A DNA stretch of 64,000 nucleotides, taken from Vitrella brassicaformis CCMP3155. Lineage: Eukaryota; Protista; Chromerida. A model generated the notes under the pieces. It was not told the DNA's origin. It saw nothing but the letters and a program-made list of their open reading frames with translations, and searched no databases. A program made the position numbers and the translations under genes. Where the stretch lies: assembly GCA_001179505.1 (NCBI GenBank), contig CDMY01000033.1, forward strand, positions 124,001 through 188,000. Direction: 5' to 3'. This document shows positions 19,799-27,173 of the stretch, one piece after another (within the stretch, counting starts at the first letter, position 1; every line of letters starts with the position of its first letter).

Positions 19799-21271
19799 CA
19801 GCCTGATGGTCACGTCCTTGGGGGGCGTTAAATTACATCGCTGCCTACATTTTATATCCCTAGTGCTGGTTGTCGCGATGTTTGCATTCGTTGACACCAA
19901 AGACTTGCTCACAGACATTGAACACGTTCTCACGTGAATCGGACTTATTCTCAAGTATCGGTTTTGTGTCAACCAATCAGACTTTGCTTGCCTAATGGAC
20001 ACGCCAATCGATTGAATGCACCATGTGTGTGTCTCTCTTTCCATCCATCTAAACAACCAACCGTCTCCCTGATACACATACACATACATACAAAAATACA
20101 TACATGCCCACCGGCCCACCCACACATCACACACCAGCACGCACACACACGAGGCGGCGATGCATTTCGTGTGGATGAGCTGTGTTGTTGCTTGTATTGC
20201 TGCTGCAGGAGGGTGTTGGGGGCGTTGGTGGGGATGGTGACGGTGGGTCAGGACCGTCCCCAGACCGTTCAACAGAAAGATGCTCCAACGAACGACAGGT
20301 CGGTCGGTGAATGGCAACAGTTCACGCCAACACACACAGCACACCCACGTATCATTCATTCATCGCGGAGGTCTGAGCGGCGGGGTAGTTCGCTACTGGT
20401 GCAGGCCGTCAGGGAAAGGGAAGGGTTTGGCAGGGAGGGAGGGAGGGAGGGAGGGAGAGGGAGGTGGGCTGTGCGCTTGACGTGGGTGGACGAGCCGGTT
20501 TACACCGAGACGAATACCATTCAATTAATAAAGCTCTCTTACACACGCTCATCGGCAGTCAGTCGGTGGGCGTGGGAGTGATGCTGCCAGCTAGAGGCAC
20601 ATCCATCCAGCCCCTCCGATTCCTGCCAAGCAGAATCGGATGCTGGATATGCTCATGGTGCACCATTCGCTCATGCTCGTCCAACAACACATACAGGCAG
20701 GTAGGCAGCTCTCGCTTTCAAACACCTTTGTATGCACTCACGCCACACCACACCATACCACACCACCCCACACGGCATGACGTGACTGACACCCATATCT
20801 GTGTGTCTGTTGGTATATCTAAAAACCGCAGCGAGTGGCGCCAGCCATCGATATTCCACTCACTCACGAGTGGTCTCTCCGGCTGGCGTAAAAATACAAC
20901 GCAGAGGCAGTACCAATAGGTACGTATGGAGCTCTGACTTTCACGCGGGGCACGCAGACAGACAGGCAGCCGGAAGCAGACAGACCAGTCATGTCATGAC
21001 CCTCCCTCCTCTCGTGGGTGAGGTGACTGACTGACGGAGGGGACACGACTGGACTGTCTTTCTCGCACGCCCCGCCCCTGCGTTTCTCCCACCCCTCCCT
21101 CCCCTCCCCATCCCTCTATCTCTCAACGAGAAACATTGCACACAGACGAGTGCATGCCATGCACACATGGACTCTCTGCCGCTCTCCCAAGTGGCCGCGC
21201 TCTCAGCCCATCCAGCGACTTGTGTGTGGTGCTGGACGGACTTGGGCGTGCCTCGCTCCCATGACATCCGC

Positions 21272-23087
21272 TCACTTGCGCTGGCGGGCGCCAGAGGCCT
21301 CGCCCAACGCCTTCTCCTCTGCATATACACACACAGAAGGCACGCACACATACACATGGCTTGCCCATGTGTGTGTGGCCCCACCCCGTAGATACGCATA
21401 GGAATGCATACATACCTTCTGCGAGTCTGCCCTCGAGTATCTGGTTGTTGAGTTGGAGCTTGAGCATCTGCAGCTGCGTCTCGAAGGCGGCTGATCGACG
21501 GGCCATTTCGGCAGCGTGTCGGGCATCGAGCAGCAGGATGTCCCACTCAGCACTGCGGAGCGAGATGAGGCAGATGGACGTGATCATCTTGGCCACGCTG
21601 TCCATCGCGGTGTACCTACACGGCAGGCAGGGCAGGGAGACACGCAGACACAACACAATGGATGAATGTGTGGCAGCCCTGATGCGTCCTGCCCTTGACG
21701 TGTGCGTGTTCACGTACATGAGCTGCTCTCCCTCAGATGGCAGGATGCCCAGCTGAGCCAGGTGGAAGAAAATGCCGTACTGCACACACACACACCAGCC
21801 ACATACGATGGATGCATGATGGATGGATGAGATTGTGGGTGGGACTCCCCACCCCCCGCATGTGTGCACGTCAGTGAGGTGAGAGGTTGGCTGCTTACCG
21901 ATCCCCACCAGACGATGGTGAAGTAGAGGAGGCCCTTCTTGACCCACAGGTCGCCGTGCTTGTCCTGCACGCCATCCGTGAACCGGGCCAGGTAGTAGGC
22001 CGACGCAAAGTACCCGATGTACGCCCCGTACACGCAGCCCCAGCGGATCAACGGATTCGCAAACACTGCAGCCCTGCAATGCATTAACCAACAAAACACA
22101 AACGTGACAAGTGTGTGTGAGTAGAACACGGTACGGTGGGCTGGTGTTTCCTCTGTGTGTGGTTGGGTGAGAGGTGACTGGCTGGCTGGCTGACTGACCA
22201 GAGTCCCATCTGTAGGTAGATGGCGGTGATGACCATGGGGGGCAGCACCTTGCTCAGGGGCTGGTTGAAGATCAGACGGCCCGTCAGATACGTGTACATG
22301 GGAGCGGCCATCGTCCACTCGATGAAACGACCACCGTACACACGCCGCCCTGACGGAACAGCACACACGCACAGAGAGACACCACACCTTGCATTAGTTA
22401 ATGTCGCTCGCTGGCGTCAGTGAGTGTGTCGGTCTGTGTATCTCACCGACGACTGGGTCGAGGAATGCGGGTACCATGTCGTTGGCGAGGAAGATGTACG
22501 AGGTCATGATGACGCTCACAATGGTGACGTTGACGGTCGACACCTTCAGCTTGAAGTGCAGGTGGGCGTGGTCGGGGTGCTTCAAGATGTTCACTATCGT
22601 AAACACCATCGGAAACAACTGCACACCACCGAGACACACACACACACACACGATGTTCATTCGTCCACAGTGGGCGAGACATGTCCCCTCTCTCTCCCTC
22701 CCCCCCTGTGTTTTGGGCAGCCGGCTTACTTCCATCATGACGACGGTGCCAAGTACGTAGCATGCGATTTCGAAGAAGTAGAGCTCCGCACGGTTGGTGT
22801 GGACAGCGGGGTCGATGCGCTGTGCCGAGTAGAAGTGCAGGCTGCCCAGCAGCACCGCCCAGATGGCCGCATACGTCCCCGTGAAGACCGCACTCTCGTA
22901 GATGTTGAGTGTCTGCTTCTGCAGCACCTCCTTCTGCTCCTGCGTGTAGTCAGGATCAATTGGCTGCACGCGCACAAAGCACACCCATGCACATACGCAG
23001 GGAGGGAGAGATGGTCAAGGTCAAGCACATCAGCGCATCTCCCATGTGACCCTCAGGCATGCCGCTCACCTTCAGAATGGATGCCAT
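21272..23087 (-). CDS. Type-1 (microbial) rhodopsin A, 8 predicted TM helices, short C-terminal coiled coil, 352 aa
   Basis: Eight GT-AG exons (23087-23070, 22963-22730, 22618-22447, 22349-22199, 22073-21899, 21779-21718, 21615-21416, 21318-21272) sum to 1059 nt in frame. Helix C is GRRVYGGRFIEWTMAAP, helix F is VWWGSYGIF and helix G is TAMDSVAKM (Lys codon 21590-21588). Confidence 0.9.
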
Positions 23088-23324
23088 CGTGACGCGTTGA
23101 TCAACTCGTTCAACTCACAAAGCAAAACCCGTTTGGCGCTTCTGGTGAAAGTTTGGTCTCTGAATTCTCTTGTCCTCCTGGCTGCAACGGTTAGCTGCAC
23201 GTCGGATTTCCACCGGACTTCGGATTTCCACCGAAGTATCCGCGAGAGGCAGGTCACTCCTCCAACGGCTAGAGTTTTACGTGAAACCTTCTCTCAGCTT
23301 CCGCGGTGCGAGCTTGAATAAGGG
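23088..23324. promoter_or_regulatory. Putative bidirectional promoter of the rhodopsin pair, with a 14-bp direct repeat overlapping a hairpin
   Basis: tcggatttccaccg at 23202-23215 and 23220-23233; inverted repeat acttcgg (23217-23223) / ccgaagt (23231-23237). Promoter function is inferred. Confidence 0.55.
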
Positions 23325-25928
23325 ATGGCGAGAATGACGTCCACTACTCATCCCACCGTGGGCGGTGCGCCGCCTATGGCACCCTCCAAGTGTTTCGACA
23401 AGGAGGGGATGGGCGGCGAGGAGGGTGCCCTTATCGTACGCAAGACAGTCGAGCGGGACGCCCGCAGCGAGAGCGTTGAGTCCAAGGCGAGTGTGGACGA
23501 CACGCTGCCCTACTTTTGTCTGCGTGACCTGAAGTAGGCGCGCCCGCCACACGAGACACGACCCCCCTTGACTCCCTGTGTGATGGTTGTGTCTGCAGGC
23601 TTTTTGCCTCGTACTTGCTGGCTTGGGGAGTGCTGGTGTGTGTGTGCAATGTGGTGGCTGGCCCGACCGCCAGCCGCAGCCCTCCCTCGGCCGACAGAGG
23701 GCTGTCCTCGGGGGCATTGGCAAAGGTGTTCGGCCTCTCGTCCATGATACTTCTCATCATGGTCGCCATGGAGCTCTTCCCAATGATTTTTACCGGCGTG
23801 ACAGTGCGCCGGGACCCTTCGGACAAGCGGCTGCTGTTCGTTCGAGAGGCGACAGCGGTGCTGTTTTTTGTCAAGGTGGTGTGTGCGGCGAGTTACGGGA
23901 TCCTCACCTCGGGTCTGATGCCGTCCCAGCTGGACCACCTGACAGGTCGGCCGGTGATGAGCCTGCGGTCGATGGAGTGGGCCTGCAGCTTCCCCCTGAT
24001 CCTGCGACTACACGGCCTGCACGCATTCAAGACCACCAATGAACGCATCTACGCCGCCATGATGCTCGGGTTCTTCACACCTATGTTGCTGCACTGGTGA
24101 GCCCACCTGACCTGATGCTGGCTGGCTGGCTGGCTGGGGGACTGGCGGTGTCCATCCATCCATCGTTGCCTCTGCCTTTCTTTCTTTCTTGTGTGTGGTA
24201 TGTGCCCCTAGGGGATCTCTGGTGCCTCTTACATGGCTGAGTTGGGCCATGCATGGCGCGGCGATTGCGGGCGTCATAGGAACCATCTACACGACCTCCA
24301 AAGTCTCTCGTGGTGGCTGTGTTTCTGCGCCGTCCCCCCAGCAGCCTGATGGAGATGGAGGAGACTTGGTGGACACCATCTGCCACTTCATCCTGCTGTG
24401 GTCCATCCCCGTCTCGCTAACGGCTCACACGACCATCTTTTGTTTCGCACACAGCGGCCTGCTGTCGATTACGCTTGAGCAAGTGGGGCTGGCGGCCGTC
24501 GATGTGGCCATCAAGGCGGTCGAAACGGTCGCACTGGCGTGCCTCCGCAACAGCGGCTCCAGCCTCATTCTGGAGGAAGCCCAAAAGGGCTACGGCAACA
24601 CCACCACAGCCGCCACACCACGACCACAACCGATTATCCAGGACACCGTCACCGCCCACACTCACACACACACGCGGCATGTGGGCACTTTTCCGGCCAG
24701 TGCGGCTGATGCCACCACAGGTGCCAAGGAGGGTGGGCACCTGCGGCAGCGGCAGCGGGGCCAGGCATCAGCAGCCCATGGTCAGGAGCAGCGGGTGGGC
24801 TCCTCCATGTCGTCCTACCATGGGCAGGGTCGGGTGCCCGTTCGCAGTGAGCAGCAGACGCGAGTGGACCTGCTGAAGTTGCAGCTGCAGAAAGAGCGGC
24901 TCGAACATCAGGTCAGCCACTCACCGGGGGTGTAACTACCTGGCAACTGATTCACTATCTGTGTCTCGATCGCTTTGGTGGATGGTGCATGCAGCTTGAG
25001 CTGTTGGAGTTGAGTCGTCGTCCATCGGCCTCTGCTGCGACTGCCCCTGCCCTGAGCAAGAGCCGCCCCCCACATCCCCCTACTGTGCTTCGCCGCAAGA
25101 AGAGCAACACCCTGGGGGATGCCAGTGCTGCCCACCCAGGGCTGCCGCCCCGGCCACGGGCCACCAGATCGTCCACCAGCCGGCTGCACGCCACACTGCC
25201 GCCGCGACAAGGCGACAAGCCGGACGGAGACTCGCAGCCGCCAGCTGGTGGGGTCGGGGGGGTGTCGGTGGGTGTGGCCAACACCAAGAGCTTCACTCTC
25301 GCCGACACCTCTAGCAGCGGGACGAACACGAGTTCGGGCGAGATGGCTCGCAGCCATGTGGGTGCCCGATCTTCGCATCGGCAGCGGTTGATTGACCGCA
25401 AGATGGGGCACTCCACCAAGGGGGGCGGGGGGGCCGACGACGGCACTCTGGACGTCAGACTAGCACTCGGCAAGGCCGCTGAGACTGCATGTGAACATTT
25501 TGTCAAGCGACGTAAGGAATGCACGGTCGGGACGGGACGCAGACACAGAGGGAGACGGCATGCGCATGTGTGGGCGTCTTTGTACATGTGGGTTCAGGTA
25601 ATGCCTGTTTGAAGAGTCTAAGCAACAAGACCCATCGCGACCTGGTTATCGAGTACCTGGTAAGCGGCTCGCCTCGCCTCGCCTCGCCGGGCTGCCTGCC
25701 TACCTGCCTGCCTGACATCAACAGATACCTGTATATTGTGTGCGTCTGTAGGTGTGCCAGAAGCGCGCGTCATTTCTGGTTCGACGGCGTCGCTTGCGCC
25801 CACGCCTGACACCAACAATTGCCGCTGCTCTGCGCATGATGTACCAGCAGCAGCAGCCACCACATCATGACCTCACGGGGCAGTTGGGGGATGCATCTGG
25901 CAGTCTTGTGAAGGGGTGTGTGGGGTGA
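23325..25928 (+). CDS. Type-1 (microbial) rhodopsin B, 8 predicted TM helices, coiled coil and long low-complexity tail, about 720 aa
   Basis: Six GT-AG exons (23325-23533, 23599-24096, 24212-24911, 24995-25511, 25598-25659, 25752-25928) sum to 2163 nt in frame. Helix C is GRPVMSLRSMEWACSFP and helix G is AAVDVAIKA (Lys codon 24513-24515). Tail exons are less certain. Confidence 0.82.
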
Positions 25929-27173
25929 AATGAATCAATGAGCTGGGATTTTTGCTTGCGGGGAGACACCGATCACTCTAATGCTGCTGTGCATGTCTGT
26001 CTGTCTGTCTATGTCTGTGTGTTGGGGGAAGTTAGGGAGGCCCTTGACTGACTGAGCTGACAAGGGGCATCCCATGCATTCAGCTGGGGGGGGGGGAGGT
26101 GAGGGCATTCCATTCACCATGCCACTGGGTGGGGTGGGGTGGGCGTTTCAGCCAGCAGGGCGAGTCAGGGCAGGGGGAGTGGGGGATTTGAAACGACAGG
26201 GGCGGTGCGGTGCGCCTGGCGTGAATGCATATCATATGTGCATGCCATATGATACATCCATCTCCTGTATGTATGTATGTATGTGTGTATGTATGTGGGG
26301 GCGGATGTGTGTGGATGGGATGTGGCTGTCCTGTCTGTCAGTCAGTCAGTACACAGACTGACTGAGATGGTTTGTATGGGTGCCGTGCGGTGGGTACGTA
26401 TGGGTGGGTATGAATGAGGATGGGTGTAGTGCGCTGTGAATGTTATTACCCACCTCGGCTACCTGTTCAGCCTTGTTCGCTTTTTGCGCACGCAACACAC
26501 GTGTGTGTGCAGGTGTCGGTCATGGCTGACCAAGGAGCCGAGAGGGTAATGTAATGGGTGCTGTGGAACTAACTGCTGCCTCAACTCAACCCGATTTCTT
26601 GTCCATCCATCCACCGTGCTTCCTTTTATGTGTCTGCGTGTAGCTTACATGTATGCGTGTGCGTGTGCGTGCGTGCGGGTGGGGCGGGTTGTCTGCACGT
26701 CCTAACGCTACTGCGATGCTCTGGGTACCTACCTGCGGTCTTTCTTTCCCTGACTTGTCCAAGGCCTGCCTGACACACATGAGTGAGTGAATGAGTGAGT
26801 GGAGCAGACACCTTCTAGTGTAGGGACATAGAGCATGTTGGTGCATGCGGGACCATACAGACACCAGAGAACATTGCTTACAAAGAGAGAATTTCAATCA
26901 TGAACTCCACGAATTACGGCCCCCATGCACAGCAGGCGGCCCCCATACACAGCAGGAAGGACAGCACATTCATGGAGTCAGTCGTGTCTGAATCATATGT
27001 TTGTATGTATAGCACCACACCGGGTCATCCATCCATCCATCCGCCCATCCATACGTCTCTCTGTCTGCACATAATGGACGCATGGATGGGAGGCTACGCT
27101 AGGACAAAGTCAGTCCGGCACTGCCAAGCAGGGATTCAGGCTACAACGGTGCTACCATCCTATGGGTGGTAAT

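What the first reader, a model, noticed from the sequence alone, without database searches (positions are those of the whole stretch)
21272..25928. Head-to-head pair of paralogous 8-TM microbial rhodopsins with no effector domain: candidate two-subunit photoreceptor
Seen: two spliced genes with start codons 237 bp apart, on opposite strands. Both have an extra N-terminal helix (YAAIWAVLL / YLLAWGVLV) plus seven rhodopsin helices, and share MELFPMxFT, LDxxxGRxVxxxRxxEW, EQxxxxxxDxxxK and LKLQL. Both have Glu at the bacteriorhodopsin D85 site, Asp at D212 and the Schiff-base Lys, but Leu at the D96 proton-donor site. Established: the 8-TM topology followed by a coiled coil is typical of enzymerhodopsins (RhGC, RhPDE, histidine-kinase rhodopsins) and bestrhodopsin domains, and fungal NeoR works as a heterodimer with its RhGC partners. 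Here no cyclase, PDE, kinase or bestrophin domain follows. Inference: these are co-expressed sensory rhodopsins that dimerise and signal in trans, possibly an undescribed class in a chromerid.
Basis: partly seen in the sequence, partly recalled or inferred. Interest (0 to 1): 0.93.

Follow-up and report, generated by a model that had tools for sequence, protein, structure and literature searches.

The report
Bestrhodopsin-like rhodopsin pair without channel
Two neighbouring, co-expressed genes of the alga Vitrella brassicaformis encode light-sensor-type membrane proteins related to the rhodopsin part of bestrhodopsin ion channels but with no channel attached; one looks like a working photoreceptor and the other like a fast-evolving, possibly light-blind partner.

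Summary
Gene A (minus strand, 8 exons, 352 aa, CEL91947.1) and gene B (plus strand, 6 exons, 720 aa, CEL91948.1) have start codons 237 bp apart. RNA contigs from three runs show 12 of the 13 introns and both genes. Neither transcript reaches an effector domain.

Both proteins model as 8-TM type-1 rhodopsins. Both carry Arg, Glu and Trp in helix C, Asp and Lys in helix G, and Leu at the D96 site.

They are not an unplaced class. Gene A matches the Phaeocystis bestrhodopsin structure 7PL9 at E = 4e-48, across both of its rhodopsin domains and the helix after TM7. The next PDB hit is 4e-5. A lacks the fused bestrophin and has Ala at the third counterion site, so far-red absorption is not expected.

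A has a 354-aa orthologue in Chromera velia. Its post-TM7 helix is as conserved as its retinal helices.

B belongs to a fast-evolving sister lineage. B's Chromera orthologue and its Vitrella paralogue both have Arg instead of the Schiff-base Lys.

Best reading: A is a stand-alone bestrhodopsin-family sensor that signals in trans, and B is a diverged paralogue that may be its partner. Heteromer formation is untested. The scan noted this stretch before, in overlapping windows.

The parts
21272..23087 (-). Gene A coding region (CEL91947.1 = P0012, 352 aa). Exons: 23087-23070, 22963-22730, 22618-22447, 22349-22199, 22073-21899, 21779-21718, 21615-21416, 21318-21272.
   Evidence: Model built and identical to P0012. 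Six of the seven junctions appear in RNA contigs.
21112..23260 (-). Extent of the gene A transcript contig (about 1392 nt spliced; 3'UTR about 160 nt, 5'UTR about 173 nt).
   Evidence: records 2, 5 and 8. The 5' end was computed from contig length minus exon lengths.
23325..25928 (+). Gene B coding region (CEL91948.1 = P0006, 720 aa). Exons: 23325-23533, 23599-24096, 24212-24911, 24995-25511, 25598-25659, 25752-25928.
   Evidence: Identical to P0006. All five junctions appear in RNA contigs.
23308..26259 (+). Extent of the gene B transcript contigs.
   Evidence: The 5' end comes from the JGI transcript contig L001. The 3' end comes from X8 record 9.
23088..23324 (.). 237-bp interval between the two start codons. 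The mapped divergent transcript 5' ends leave at most about 47 bp (23261-23307), which makes this a compact bidirectional promoter.
23199..23233 (+). Tandem 17-nt repeat ACGTCGGATTTCCACCG / ACTTCGGATTTCCACCG, lying in the 5'UTR of gene A.
   Evidence: It is the only occurrence in the 64-kb window and is absent from the paralogue loci.
22285..22329 (-). Gene A helix C motif R149-F-I-E152-W153-T-M-A156-A-P ... L163, corresponding to BR R82, D85, W86, T89 and D96.
   Evidence: Alignment to 7PL9.
21588..21602 (-). Gene A helix G motif D276-S-V-A-K280, holding the Asp counterion and the Schiff-base Lys.
21416..21557 (-). Gene A cytoplasmic helix continuing from TM7 (about residues 291-347, including LKLQL at 322-326). 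Its last few residues lie in the final exon, 21318-21290. It aligns to the R1-R2 and R2-bestrophin linker helices of 7PL9.
   Evidence: 71% identical to the Chromera orthologue.
23966..24010 (+). Gene B helix C motif R193-S-M-E196-W197-A-C-S200 ... L207.
24501..24515 (+). Gene B helix G motif D333-V-A-I-K337.
24870..24911 (+). Start of the gene B coiled-coil helix (LLKLQLQKERLEHQ..., continuing in the next exon). A disordered linker of about 80 residues separates it from the TM7 helix.
   Evidence: (helix 395-422 of P0006:55-480).

Best explanation
This is a divergently transcribed pair of ancient paralogues from the bestrhodopsin branch of 8-TM microbial rhodopsins. Both are encoded as stand-alone proteins without the bestrophin channel.

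Gene A has an intact retinal site: R149, E152, W153, W247, Y251, D276 and K280. It has a Glu/Asp counterion pair but Ala where bestrhodopsin and NeoR carry the third carboxylate. It most likely binds retinal and works as a visible-light sensor rather than a far-red one.

A's output most likely runs through the conserved 55-residue cytoplasmic helix that continues TM7, and reaches a separately encoded partner. Gene A is not expected to be an outward proton pump, because the D96 site is Leu.

Gene B keeps the 8-TM fold, the Arg/Glu/Trp of helix C, the Asp and, in this copy, the Lys. It has lost the helix-F aromatics and carries a long disordered tail. Its lineage tolerates loss of the Lys. It is therefore most likely an accessory or scaffold subunit whose role does not depend on its own photochemistry.

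Shown here: the gene models, expression of both genes in the same samples, the absence of any effector domain, the family placement, the age of the A/B split, and Lys loss in B-type relatives.

Inferred: retinal binding by A, the colour, signalling in trans, and any A-B contact.
For: Family placement:
- Gene A against the PDB: 7PL9 scores E = 3.9e-48 (167.5 bits) over both rhodopsin domains and the post-TM7 helix. The next hit is 4e-5.
- Paralogue P0003 against 7PL9: 2.4e-40.
- The TM1 Glu (MELFPM) aligns with a Glu in both 7PL9 domains.

Fold:
- The AlphaFold2 models show 8 TM helices plus a long C-terminal helix (pLDDT 81.8 for A, 75 for B).
- VIA-align gives Z = 28.9 to the 8-TM RhPDE domain and Z = 25.7 to 7PL9 R2.
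- Foldseek's top hits for B are RhPDE.

No effector:
- Pfam finds only Bac_rhodopsin.
- Transcript contigs end shortly after each stop codon.

Expression:
- Both transcripts appear in X1, X2 and X8. Depths are 107/51/632 for A and 31/16/226 for B.
- Transcript 5' ends lie at most about 47 bp apart.

Conservation:
- The Chromera orthologue of A has the same length (354 aa) and 55% identity.
- The post-TM7 helix is 71% identical, against 73-77% for TM3, TM4 and TM7.

B lineage:
- The A-type/B-type split has 100/100 support, and each type has a Chromera member.
- Arg replaces Lys in CvB and VbB2.

Counterion triad: the literature describes carboxylates at BR sites 85, 89 and 212 in bestrhodopsin and NeoR (PMC12875766). 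A has Ala156 at site 89.
Against: - There is no direct evidence for retinal binding, colour, oligomeric state or a partner.
- Pfam's Bac_rhodopsin model does not hit gene A itself at E <= 1. Its Chromera orthologue scores 45 bits, and 7PL9 settles the homology.
- Co-expression rests on assembler word depth in three runs from two studies. That is a weak measure.
- Gene B alone has no significant PDB sequence hit. Its link to bestrhodopsin runs through A.
- The only exhaustive HMMER search was run with B exon 2, not with A. The true taxonomic spread of A-type proteins, and whether stand-alone forms are already catalogued, is not established.
- The founding bestrhodopsin paper could not be read.
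Confidence: 0.6

Rival explanations
1. A and B form an obligate heteromeric photoreceptor. A senses light. B pairs with A through the TM domain and/or the shared LKLQL coiled coil, and passes the signal on through its long tail.
For: - Head-to-head genes with a promoter interval of at most about 47 bp.
- A steady A:B depth ratio of 2.8-3.45 in three runs, while the neighbouring transcript varies 1.2-2.9-fold relative to A.
- An LKLQL-type amphipathic helix is present in A, A2, B and CvA.
- B-type tails share short motifs.
Against: - No interaction test was possible.
- The second Vitrella A-type and B-type genes are on different contigs next to unrelated genes.
- Adjacency in Chromera is unknown.
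- The A/B split is ancient, so adjacency could be a relic.
Confidence: 0.3
2. A and B work independently, each as a homo-oligomer or with its own partner. The head-to-head arrangement is a leftover of an old inverted duplication.
For: - The A-type/B-type split predates the Vitrella-Chromera divergence.
- The other paralogue pair is unlinked.
- The two have very different tails and evolutionary rates.
Against: Adjacency has survived divergence down to 23% identity, and the promoter interval is very short. Both fit better with selection for co-regulation.
Confidence: 0.3
3. Split bestrhodopsin: A, with or without B, assembles non-covalently around a separately encoded bestrophin pentamer and gates it by light, as the fused rhodopsin domains do in bestrhodopsins.
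For: - A aligns with 7PL9 R2 up to the linker that leads into the bestrophin domain (query residues 67-346).
Against: - There is no bestrophin gene within 10 kb.
- The noted bestrophin was read as plastid-type.
- A lacks the third counterion carboxylate typical of bestrhodopsins.
- There is no interaction evidence.
Confidence: 0.12
4. Gene A is itself a light-gated channel or ion pump.
For: - It has the Glu-at-D85 plus Asp-at-D212 pair, as in many channelrhodopsins.
- Chrimson is the second PDB hit (4e-5).
- A conserved intramembrane Glu sits in TM1.
- Vitrella does encode functional channelrhodopsins (PMC10147648).
Against: - Sequence affinity to bestrhodopsin domains exceeds that to channelrhodopsins by more than 40 orders of magnitude in E-value.
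- The D96 site is Leu and the T89 site is Ala.
- The characterised Vitrella proteins VbACR2 (CEM28120) and CEL94649 are different genes with different counterion residues.
Confidence: 0.08

Closest known systems
Bestrhodopsins (rhodopsin or rhodopsin-rhodopsin fused to bestrophin; Phaeocystis antarctica RR-B, PDB 7PL9; Rozenberg et al. 2022)
   Same: - Clear sequence homology of gene A to both rhodopsin domains (E = 3.9e-48).
- An extra N-terminal TM helix.
- Shared motifs: GRRVY-x2-R-[FY]-[IM]-EWT in helix C, WW-x2-YG in helix F, and EQL-x-[YW]-T-x-MD-x3-K in helix G.
- A conserved Glu in TM1.
- A long helix continuing from TM7.
   Different: - No bestrophin domain in either gene or transcript.
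- The third carboxylate of the counterion triad (BR T89 site) is Ala in A and Ser in B.
- The two rhodopsin units are separate genes, not a tandem in one chain.
- B is far more diverged, and its relatives lack the Lys.
Enzymerhodopsins (RhPDE from Salpingoeca rosetta, PDB 7CJ3/7D7Q; RhGC; NeoR/RGC heterodimers; HKRs)
   Same: - 8-TM topology, and the best structural match (Z = 28.9; Foldseek E = 6e-8).
- A Glu/Asp counterion pair as in SrRh-PDE (PMC12875766).
- A cytoplasmic helix after TM7.
- The NeoR precedent for pairing of two different rhodopsins.
   Different: - No cyclase, phosphodiesterase or kinase domain.
- Sequence similarity is marginal (RhPDE E = 0.03 against P0003).
Sensory rhodopsin II with its transducer HtrII (haloarchaea)
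   Same: A rhodopsin without an effector domain that must signal to a separately encoded partner. Structural Z = 26.
   Different: SRII has 7 TM helices and no long C-terminal helix. It is unrelated in sequence beyond the family level (E about 0.3). Its partner is a two-helix transducer, not a rhodopsin paralogue.
Vitrella channelrhodopsin-like proteins VbACR2 (CEM28120) and CEL94649
   Same: Same organism, and also microbial rhodopsins.
   Different: They are different genes from the 7-TM channelrhodopsin branch with other counterion residues. VbACR2 has Gln at the D85 site, and CEL94649 has only Glu96 (PMC10147648).

Membership tests
Microbial (type-1) rhodopsin | Seven-helix retinal-protein fold | tested here: met
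   AlphaFold2 models align to BR, SRII, RhPDE and 7PL9 at Z = 24.5-28.9. Foldseek gives probability 1.0 for both A and B.
Microbial (type-1) rhodopsin | Schiff-base Lys in TM7 (DxxxK), with Arg and Trp in helix C | tested here: met
   A has K280, D276, R149 and W153. B has K337, D333, R193 and W197. The B-type relatives P0002 and P0005 have Arg at the Lys site.
Microbial (type-1) rhodopsin | Pfam Bac_rhodopsin (PF01036) above the gathering score | tested here: inconclusive
   B scores 32.3 bits against a cutoff of 24.6. A has no hit at E <= 1, but its orthologue P0013 scores 45.2 bits.
Microbial (type-1) rhodopsin | Covalent retinal binding and a photocycle | not testable with these tools
   This needs expression with retinal.
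Bestrhodopsin | Rhodopsin domain homologous to bestrhodopsin R domains | tested here: met
   A against 7PL9: 3.9e-48, both domains. P0003: 2.4e-40. B exon 2: only 0.024. The whole B domain has no hit.
Bestrhodopsin | C-terminal bestrophin channel domain in the same polypeptide | tested here: not met
   No Pfam bestrophin hit. Transcripts end after the stop codons. Neighbouring genes are unrelated.
Bestrhodopsin | Counterion triad: carboxylates at BR sites 85, 89 and 212 (PMC12875766) | tested here: not met
   A has E152, A156 and D276. B has E196, S200 and D333.
Bestrhodopsin | Far-red absorption (about 660 nm) and an all-trans to 11-cis photoreaction | not testable with these tools
   Spectroscopy is required. 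The missing third carboxylate argues against it.
Enzymerhodopsin (RhGC / RhPDE / HKR) | Extra N-terminal helix (8 TM) with a cytoplasmic linker helix | tested here: met
   The RhPDE match covers model residues 25-304.
Enzymerhodopsin (RhGC / RhPDE / HKR) | Fused cyclase, phosphodiesterase or histidine-kinase domain | tested here: not met
Channelrhodopsin | Closest sequence affinity to channelrhodopsins, or identity with the characterised Vitrella ChR-like genes | tested here: not met
   Chrimson scores 4e-5 against 4e-48 for 7PL9. The accessions and counterion residues differ from VbACR2 and CEL94649.

The most novel reading that the evidence does not exclude
The pair is a two-gene photoreceptor of a kind not described before. 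A bestrhodopsin-family sensor (A) works as an obligate heteromer with a 'lysine-optional' pseudo-opsin paralogue (B-type). B-type has kept the 8-TM fold, the TM1 Glu and the Arg/Trp/Asp core, but not necessarily the chromophore, and it relays or localises the signal through its long tail. The complex might also gate a separately encoded bestrophin, as a split bestrhodopsin.
Probability: 0.22. Interest if true: 0.85.

Novelty: new variant of a known kind. Interest (0 to 1): 0.62.

Why it matters
Bestrhodopsins are known only as giant rhodopsin-bestrophin fusions in chlorophytes, haptophytes and dinoflagellates (PMC10962995). A conserved, expressed, bestrophin-less form in chromerids, the photosynthetic relatives of apicomplexan parasites, bears on three questions:
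- How the fusion arose: by loss of the channel, or from a stand-alone ancestor.
- How such a module signals without a built-in effector.
- How much of the far-red colour depends on the third counterion carboxylate, which A naturally lacks.

The B lineage gives a natural series running from Lys-bearing to Lys-less rhodopsin folds inside one small family. That series is useful for asking what an opsin fold does once it no longer needs retinal. A compact 352-aa sensor from this family could also be of interest as an optogenetic building block.

Tried and rejected
1. Pfam on separate exon translations. Only B exon 2 scored. One gene-A piece (window:22200-22348) was given one base out of frame, so that row is void. 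The frame was corrected.
It returned only four real relatives, all chromerid, plus one spurious bacterial Ig-repeat protein (P0004). No such search could be run with gene A.
3. The search for homologous proteins with P0003:30-235 found nothing.
4. The search for homologous proteins with P0003 region 30-470 found only the query itself, swamped by low-complexity words. A profile that included gene A's own exons finally retrieved P0012 and P0013. No search therefore reached bestrhodopsin sequences as usable ids, and no tree with outgroups could be built.
5. JGI metagenome scans: an exact 43-mer of A exon 2 found nothing, and a back-translated A-type pattern found no relative.
6. I considered identity with the published Vitrella channelrhodopsin-like proteins and rejected it.
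7. ESM Atlas searches returned only generic rhodopsin clusters.
8. The Rozenberg et al. 2022 paper is not held. I could not check whether it already lists chromerid relatives.
9. No paper in the library contains the accessions or links bestrhodopsin with chromerids.
10. Genomic context in Chromera could not be obtained. Only a transcript contig holds P0013, and P0005 is not on record.


Full report
**What is there.** The window comes from Vitrella brassicaformis CCMP3155, contig CDMY01000033.1. Reading both strands between 21.2 and 26.0 kb gives two intron-containing genes.

Gene A lies on the minus strand. It has eight exons (23087-23070, 22963-22730, 22618-22447, 22349-22199, 22073-21899, 21779-21718, 21615-21416, 21318-21272) and encodes 352 aa.

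Gene B lies on the plus strand. It has six exons (23325-23533, 23599-24096, 24212-24911, 24995-25511, 25598-25659, 25752-25928) and encodes 720 aa.

All introns are GT-AG. The translations are letter-for-letter the database proteins P0012 (CEL91947.1) and P0006 (CEL91948.1). Exactly 237 bp separate the two start codons.

**Transcript evidence.** Contigs from three RNA-type runs (X1, X2, X8) reproduce 12 of the 13 junctions. The one not listed, 22618/22730, lies beside a repeat that the tool skipped.

- The A contig is about 1392 nt. It spans 21112 to about 23260.
- The B contigs reach 26259. A JGI transcript contig starts at 23308.
- Neither transcript splices to anything downstream. The next annotated genes are unrelated: a 226-aa protein without Pfam hits, a WD40 protein and a methyltransferase.
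- The divergent 5' ends therefore lie at most about 47 bp apart.
- Assembler depths are 107/51/632 for A and 31/16/226 for B in the three runs. The ratio stays between 2.8 and 3.45.
- A neighbouring transcript at 20700-21073 varies 1.2 to 2.9-fold relative to A.

This is a hint of co-regulation from only three runs and a poor measure of expression. It is not proof.

**Are they rhodopsins and paralogues?** A and B are 23% identical over 287 residues (BLASTP E = 5e-18). They also share an intron at the same position and phase: a Trp codon split TG|G at the end of TM4. The A-type paralogue P0003 has it too.

Pfam Bac_rhodopsin scores:
- B: 32.3 bits against a cutoff of 24.6.
- The Chromera orthologue of A: 45.2 bits.
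- A itself: no hit at E <= 1.

AlphaFold2 gives confident models for both (A pLDDT 81.8, B 75). Each has eight TM helices. In A, TM7 continues as one helix to residue 347. In B, TM7 is followed by a disordered stretch of about 80 residues and then a second helix.

The A model aligns to the 8-TM RhPDE domain at Z = 28.9, including the extra N-terminal helix. It aligns to 7PL9 R2 at Z = 25.7, and to BR and SRII at Z about 25. The top four Foldseek hits for B are RhPDE chains.

By motif alignment the residues at the BR sites are:

| BR site | A | B |
|---|---|---|
| R82 | R149 | R193 |
| D85 | E152 | E196 |
| W86 | W153 | W197 |
| T89 | A156 | S200 |
| D96 | L163 | L207 |
| D212 | D276 | D333 |
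| K216 | K280 | K337 |

**Which family?** This is where the finding changes. A phmmer search of gene A against all PDB sequences gives one outstanding hit, the Phaeocystis antarctica rhodopsin-rhodopsin-bestrophin complex 7PL9. It scores E = 3.9e-48 (167.5 bits), with separate alignments to both rhodopsin domains. The next hit, Chrimson, is 4e-5. The A-type paralogue P0003 scores 2.4e-40 against 7PL9.

The alignments cover several shared features:
- GRRVY..R[FY][IM]EWT in helix C.
- WW..YG in helix F.
- EQL.[YW]T.MD...K in helix G.
- A Glu in TM1 (the MELFPM motif), conserved in A, B and both 7PL9 domains.
- The helix after TM7. In 7PL9 this helix links R1 to R2 and R2 to bestrophin. For R2 the alignment runs to A residue 346.

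A is therefore a bestrhodopsin-type rhodopsin module that ends where the channel would begin.

Two defining features of bestrhodopsins are missing. There is no bestrophin domain. The third member of the counterion triad is Ala in A and Ser in B. The literature links that triad (carboxylates at BR sites 85, 89 and 212) to absorption beyond 610 nm in bestrhodopsin and NeoR (PMC12875766). A carries the plain Glu/Asp pair, as in SrRh-PDE. I therefore predict a visible rather than far-red pigment. This is inference.

**The family in chromerids.** The exhaustive HMMER search used B exon 2 against 1.84 billion cluster representatives. It found only chromerid proteins. With the profile search, the set is:

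| Organism | A-type | B-type |
|---|---|---|
| Vitrella | A (this window); A2 = P0003 (CEM22193.1, 708 aa, with a ~130-aa insert in the E-F loop) | B (this window); B2 = P0002 (CEM05436.1, 1139 aa) |
| Chromera velia | Cvel_4599 = P0013 (354 aa) | Cvel_16259 = P0005 (1012 aa) |

A maximum-likelihood tree splits A-type from B-type with 100/100 support. It pairs Vitrella A with Chromera A (86/91) and Vitrella B with Chromera B (83/86). The A/B duplication is therefore older than the split between the two chromerid genera.

A-type proteins all keep the Lys. In the B-type set, Chromera B and Vitrella B2 both have Arg at the Schiff-base position. B2 also has Arg at the D85 site. B-type branches are long.

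Invariant across all six proteins are the helix-C Arg and Trp, the helix-G Asp, the EQ at the start of TM7 and a Pro in TM1. Retinal binding is thus conserved in A-type proteins and dispensable in B-type ones. Gene B here still has the Lys but lacks the helix-F Tyr and second Trp.

**Signalling surface.** Between Vitrella A and Chromera A, overall identity is 55%. The cytoplasmic helix after TM7 (residues 291-331) is 71% identical, as conserved as TM3, TM4 and TM7 at 73-77%. For a protein with no effector domain, this is the obvious candidate for contact with a partner.

B has a related LLKLQLQKERLE helix after its disordered linker. The three B-type tails share weak short motifs: [FY]xVCQxK..S...RR and H[RA][QK]RLI. 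Pairwise E-values are about 0.01 and only suggestive.

**Is the pairing a rule?** No. A2 lies on contig CDMY01000553, head-to-head with a Bystin gene. B2 lies on CDMY01000358, next to a PAN-domain gene. Adjacency in Chromera could not be examined.

The case for a functional A-B unit therefore rests on three things:
- The very tight divergent promoter.
- The steady depth ratio.
- The shared helix motif.

I put heteromer formation at roughly 0.3, about level with independent function.

A split-bestrhodopsin arrangement with a separately encoded bestrophin is possible. Another reader noted a stand-alone bestrophin gene elsewhere in this genome (s1-248751; unchecked). It has no direct support here. 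A pump or channel role for A itself is unlikely given the family placement and the Ala/Leu at the T89 and D96 sites.

**What is known already.** The two published Vitrella rhodopsins, VbACR2 (CEM28120) and CEL94649, are different genes from the channelrhodopsin branch (PMC10147648). No paper in the searchable library contains the accessions of A, B or their relatives, and none links bestrhodopsins with chromerids. Reviews list bestrhodopsins only from chlorophytes, haptophytes and dinoflagellates, always fused to bestrophin (PMC10962995).

The founding paper (Rozenberg et al. 2022) is not held. I cannot exclude that its supplementary trees already include these sequences.

AlphaFold DB cluster searches with both models return the same top entries. 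The first is a 344-aa protein, A0A0G4HDQ8, with 25% identity to A and TM-score 0.79 over 339 residues. The next are entries of 297-931 aa. From memory of UniProt accession ranges, not from a tool result, these look like chromerid and Symbiodinium/Polarella proteins. This hints that further stand-alone or differently fused 8-TM relatives exist in myzozoans.

**Verdict.** It is wrong that they belong to no known family. It is weakened on both subunits being photoreceptors.

The pair is best filed as a new architectural variant of the bestrhodopsin family, made of stand-alone modules. One module is conserved and probably photoactive. The other is diverging toward a chromophore-independent role. 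The scan had already flagged this same stretch several times in overlapping windows.

Noticed in passing
window 23199-23233: A perfect-core tandem repeat (ACGTCGGATTTCCACCG / ACTTCGGATTTCCACCG, spacing 18) lies inside gene A's 5'UTR, between the two start codons. It is unique in the 64-kb window and absent upstream of the paralogues. It could be a regulatory element of the shared promoter or a 5'UTR element.
   Followed up: partly
window 22180-22202 and 24117-24140: The same GGCTGGCTGGCTGG-type microsatellite sits in an intron of gene A and an intron of gene B. It produces spurious assembler 'joints' between the two genes (for example 22202->24117) and many loose ends in the contig data.
   Followed up: partly
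window 20700-21073: A separate, more deeply covered transcript contig ends only about 40 bp from gene A's 3' end. Its depth is 308/61/~1560, against 107/51/632 for A. Its gene was not identified.
   Followed up: no
L003:1576-5913 (P0002, CEM05436.1): This Vitrella B-type paralogue has Arg at both the D85 counterion site (RGMRW) and the Schiff-base Lys site (DVGGR), and a ~90-aa insert in the B-C loop. It has a rhodopsin fold but very probably cannot bind retinal. It is transcribed (Logan contig SRR646408_904).
   Followed up: partly
L002:4788-7364 (P0003, CEM22193.1): This A-type paralogue has an intact retinal site and a ~130-aa low-complexity insert in the E-F loop, plus a 240-aa acidic tail. 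It shares three intron positions with gene A and sits head-to-head with a Bystin gene.
   Followed up: partly
P0006 residues ~640-690, P0002 ~880-910, P0005 ~905-935: The otherwise disordered B-type tails share short motifs ([FY]xVCQxK..S...RR[KR] and H[RA][QK]RL[IA]). These may be docking or localisation signals. Pairwise E-values are only about 0.01.
   Followed up: partly
AlphaFold DB entry A0A0G4HDQ8: A 344-aa protein auto-named 'TLC domain-containing' is the best structural cluster match to both A and B (TM-score 0.79, 25% identity to A over 339 residues). It is probably a further member of the 8-TM-plus-helix family. Its sequence could not be fetched.
   Followed up: no
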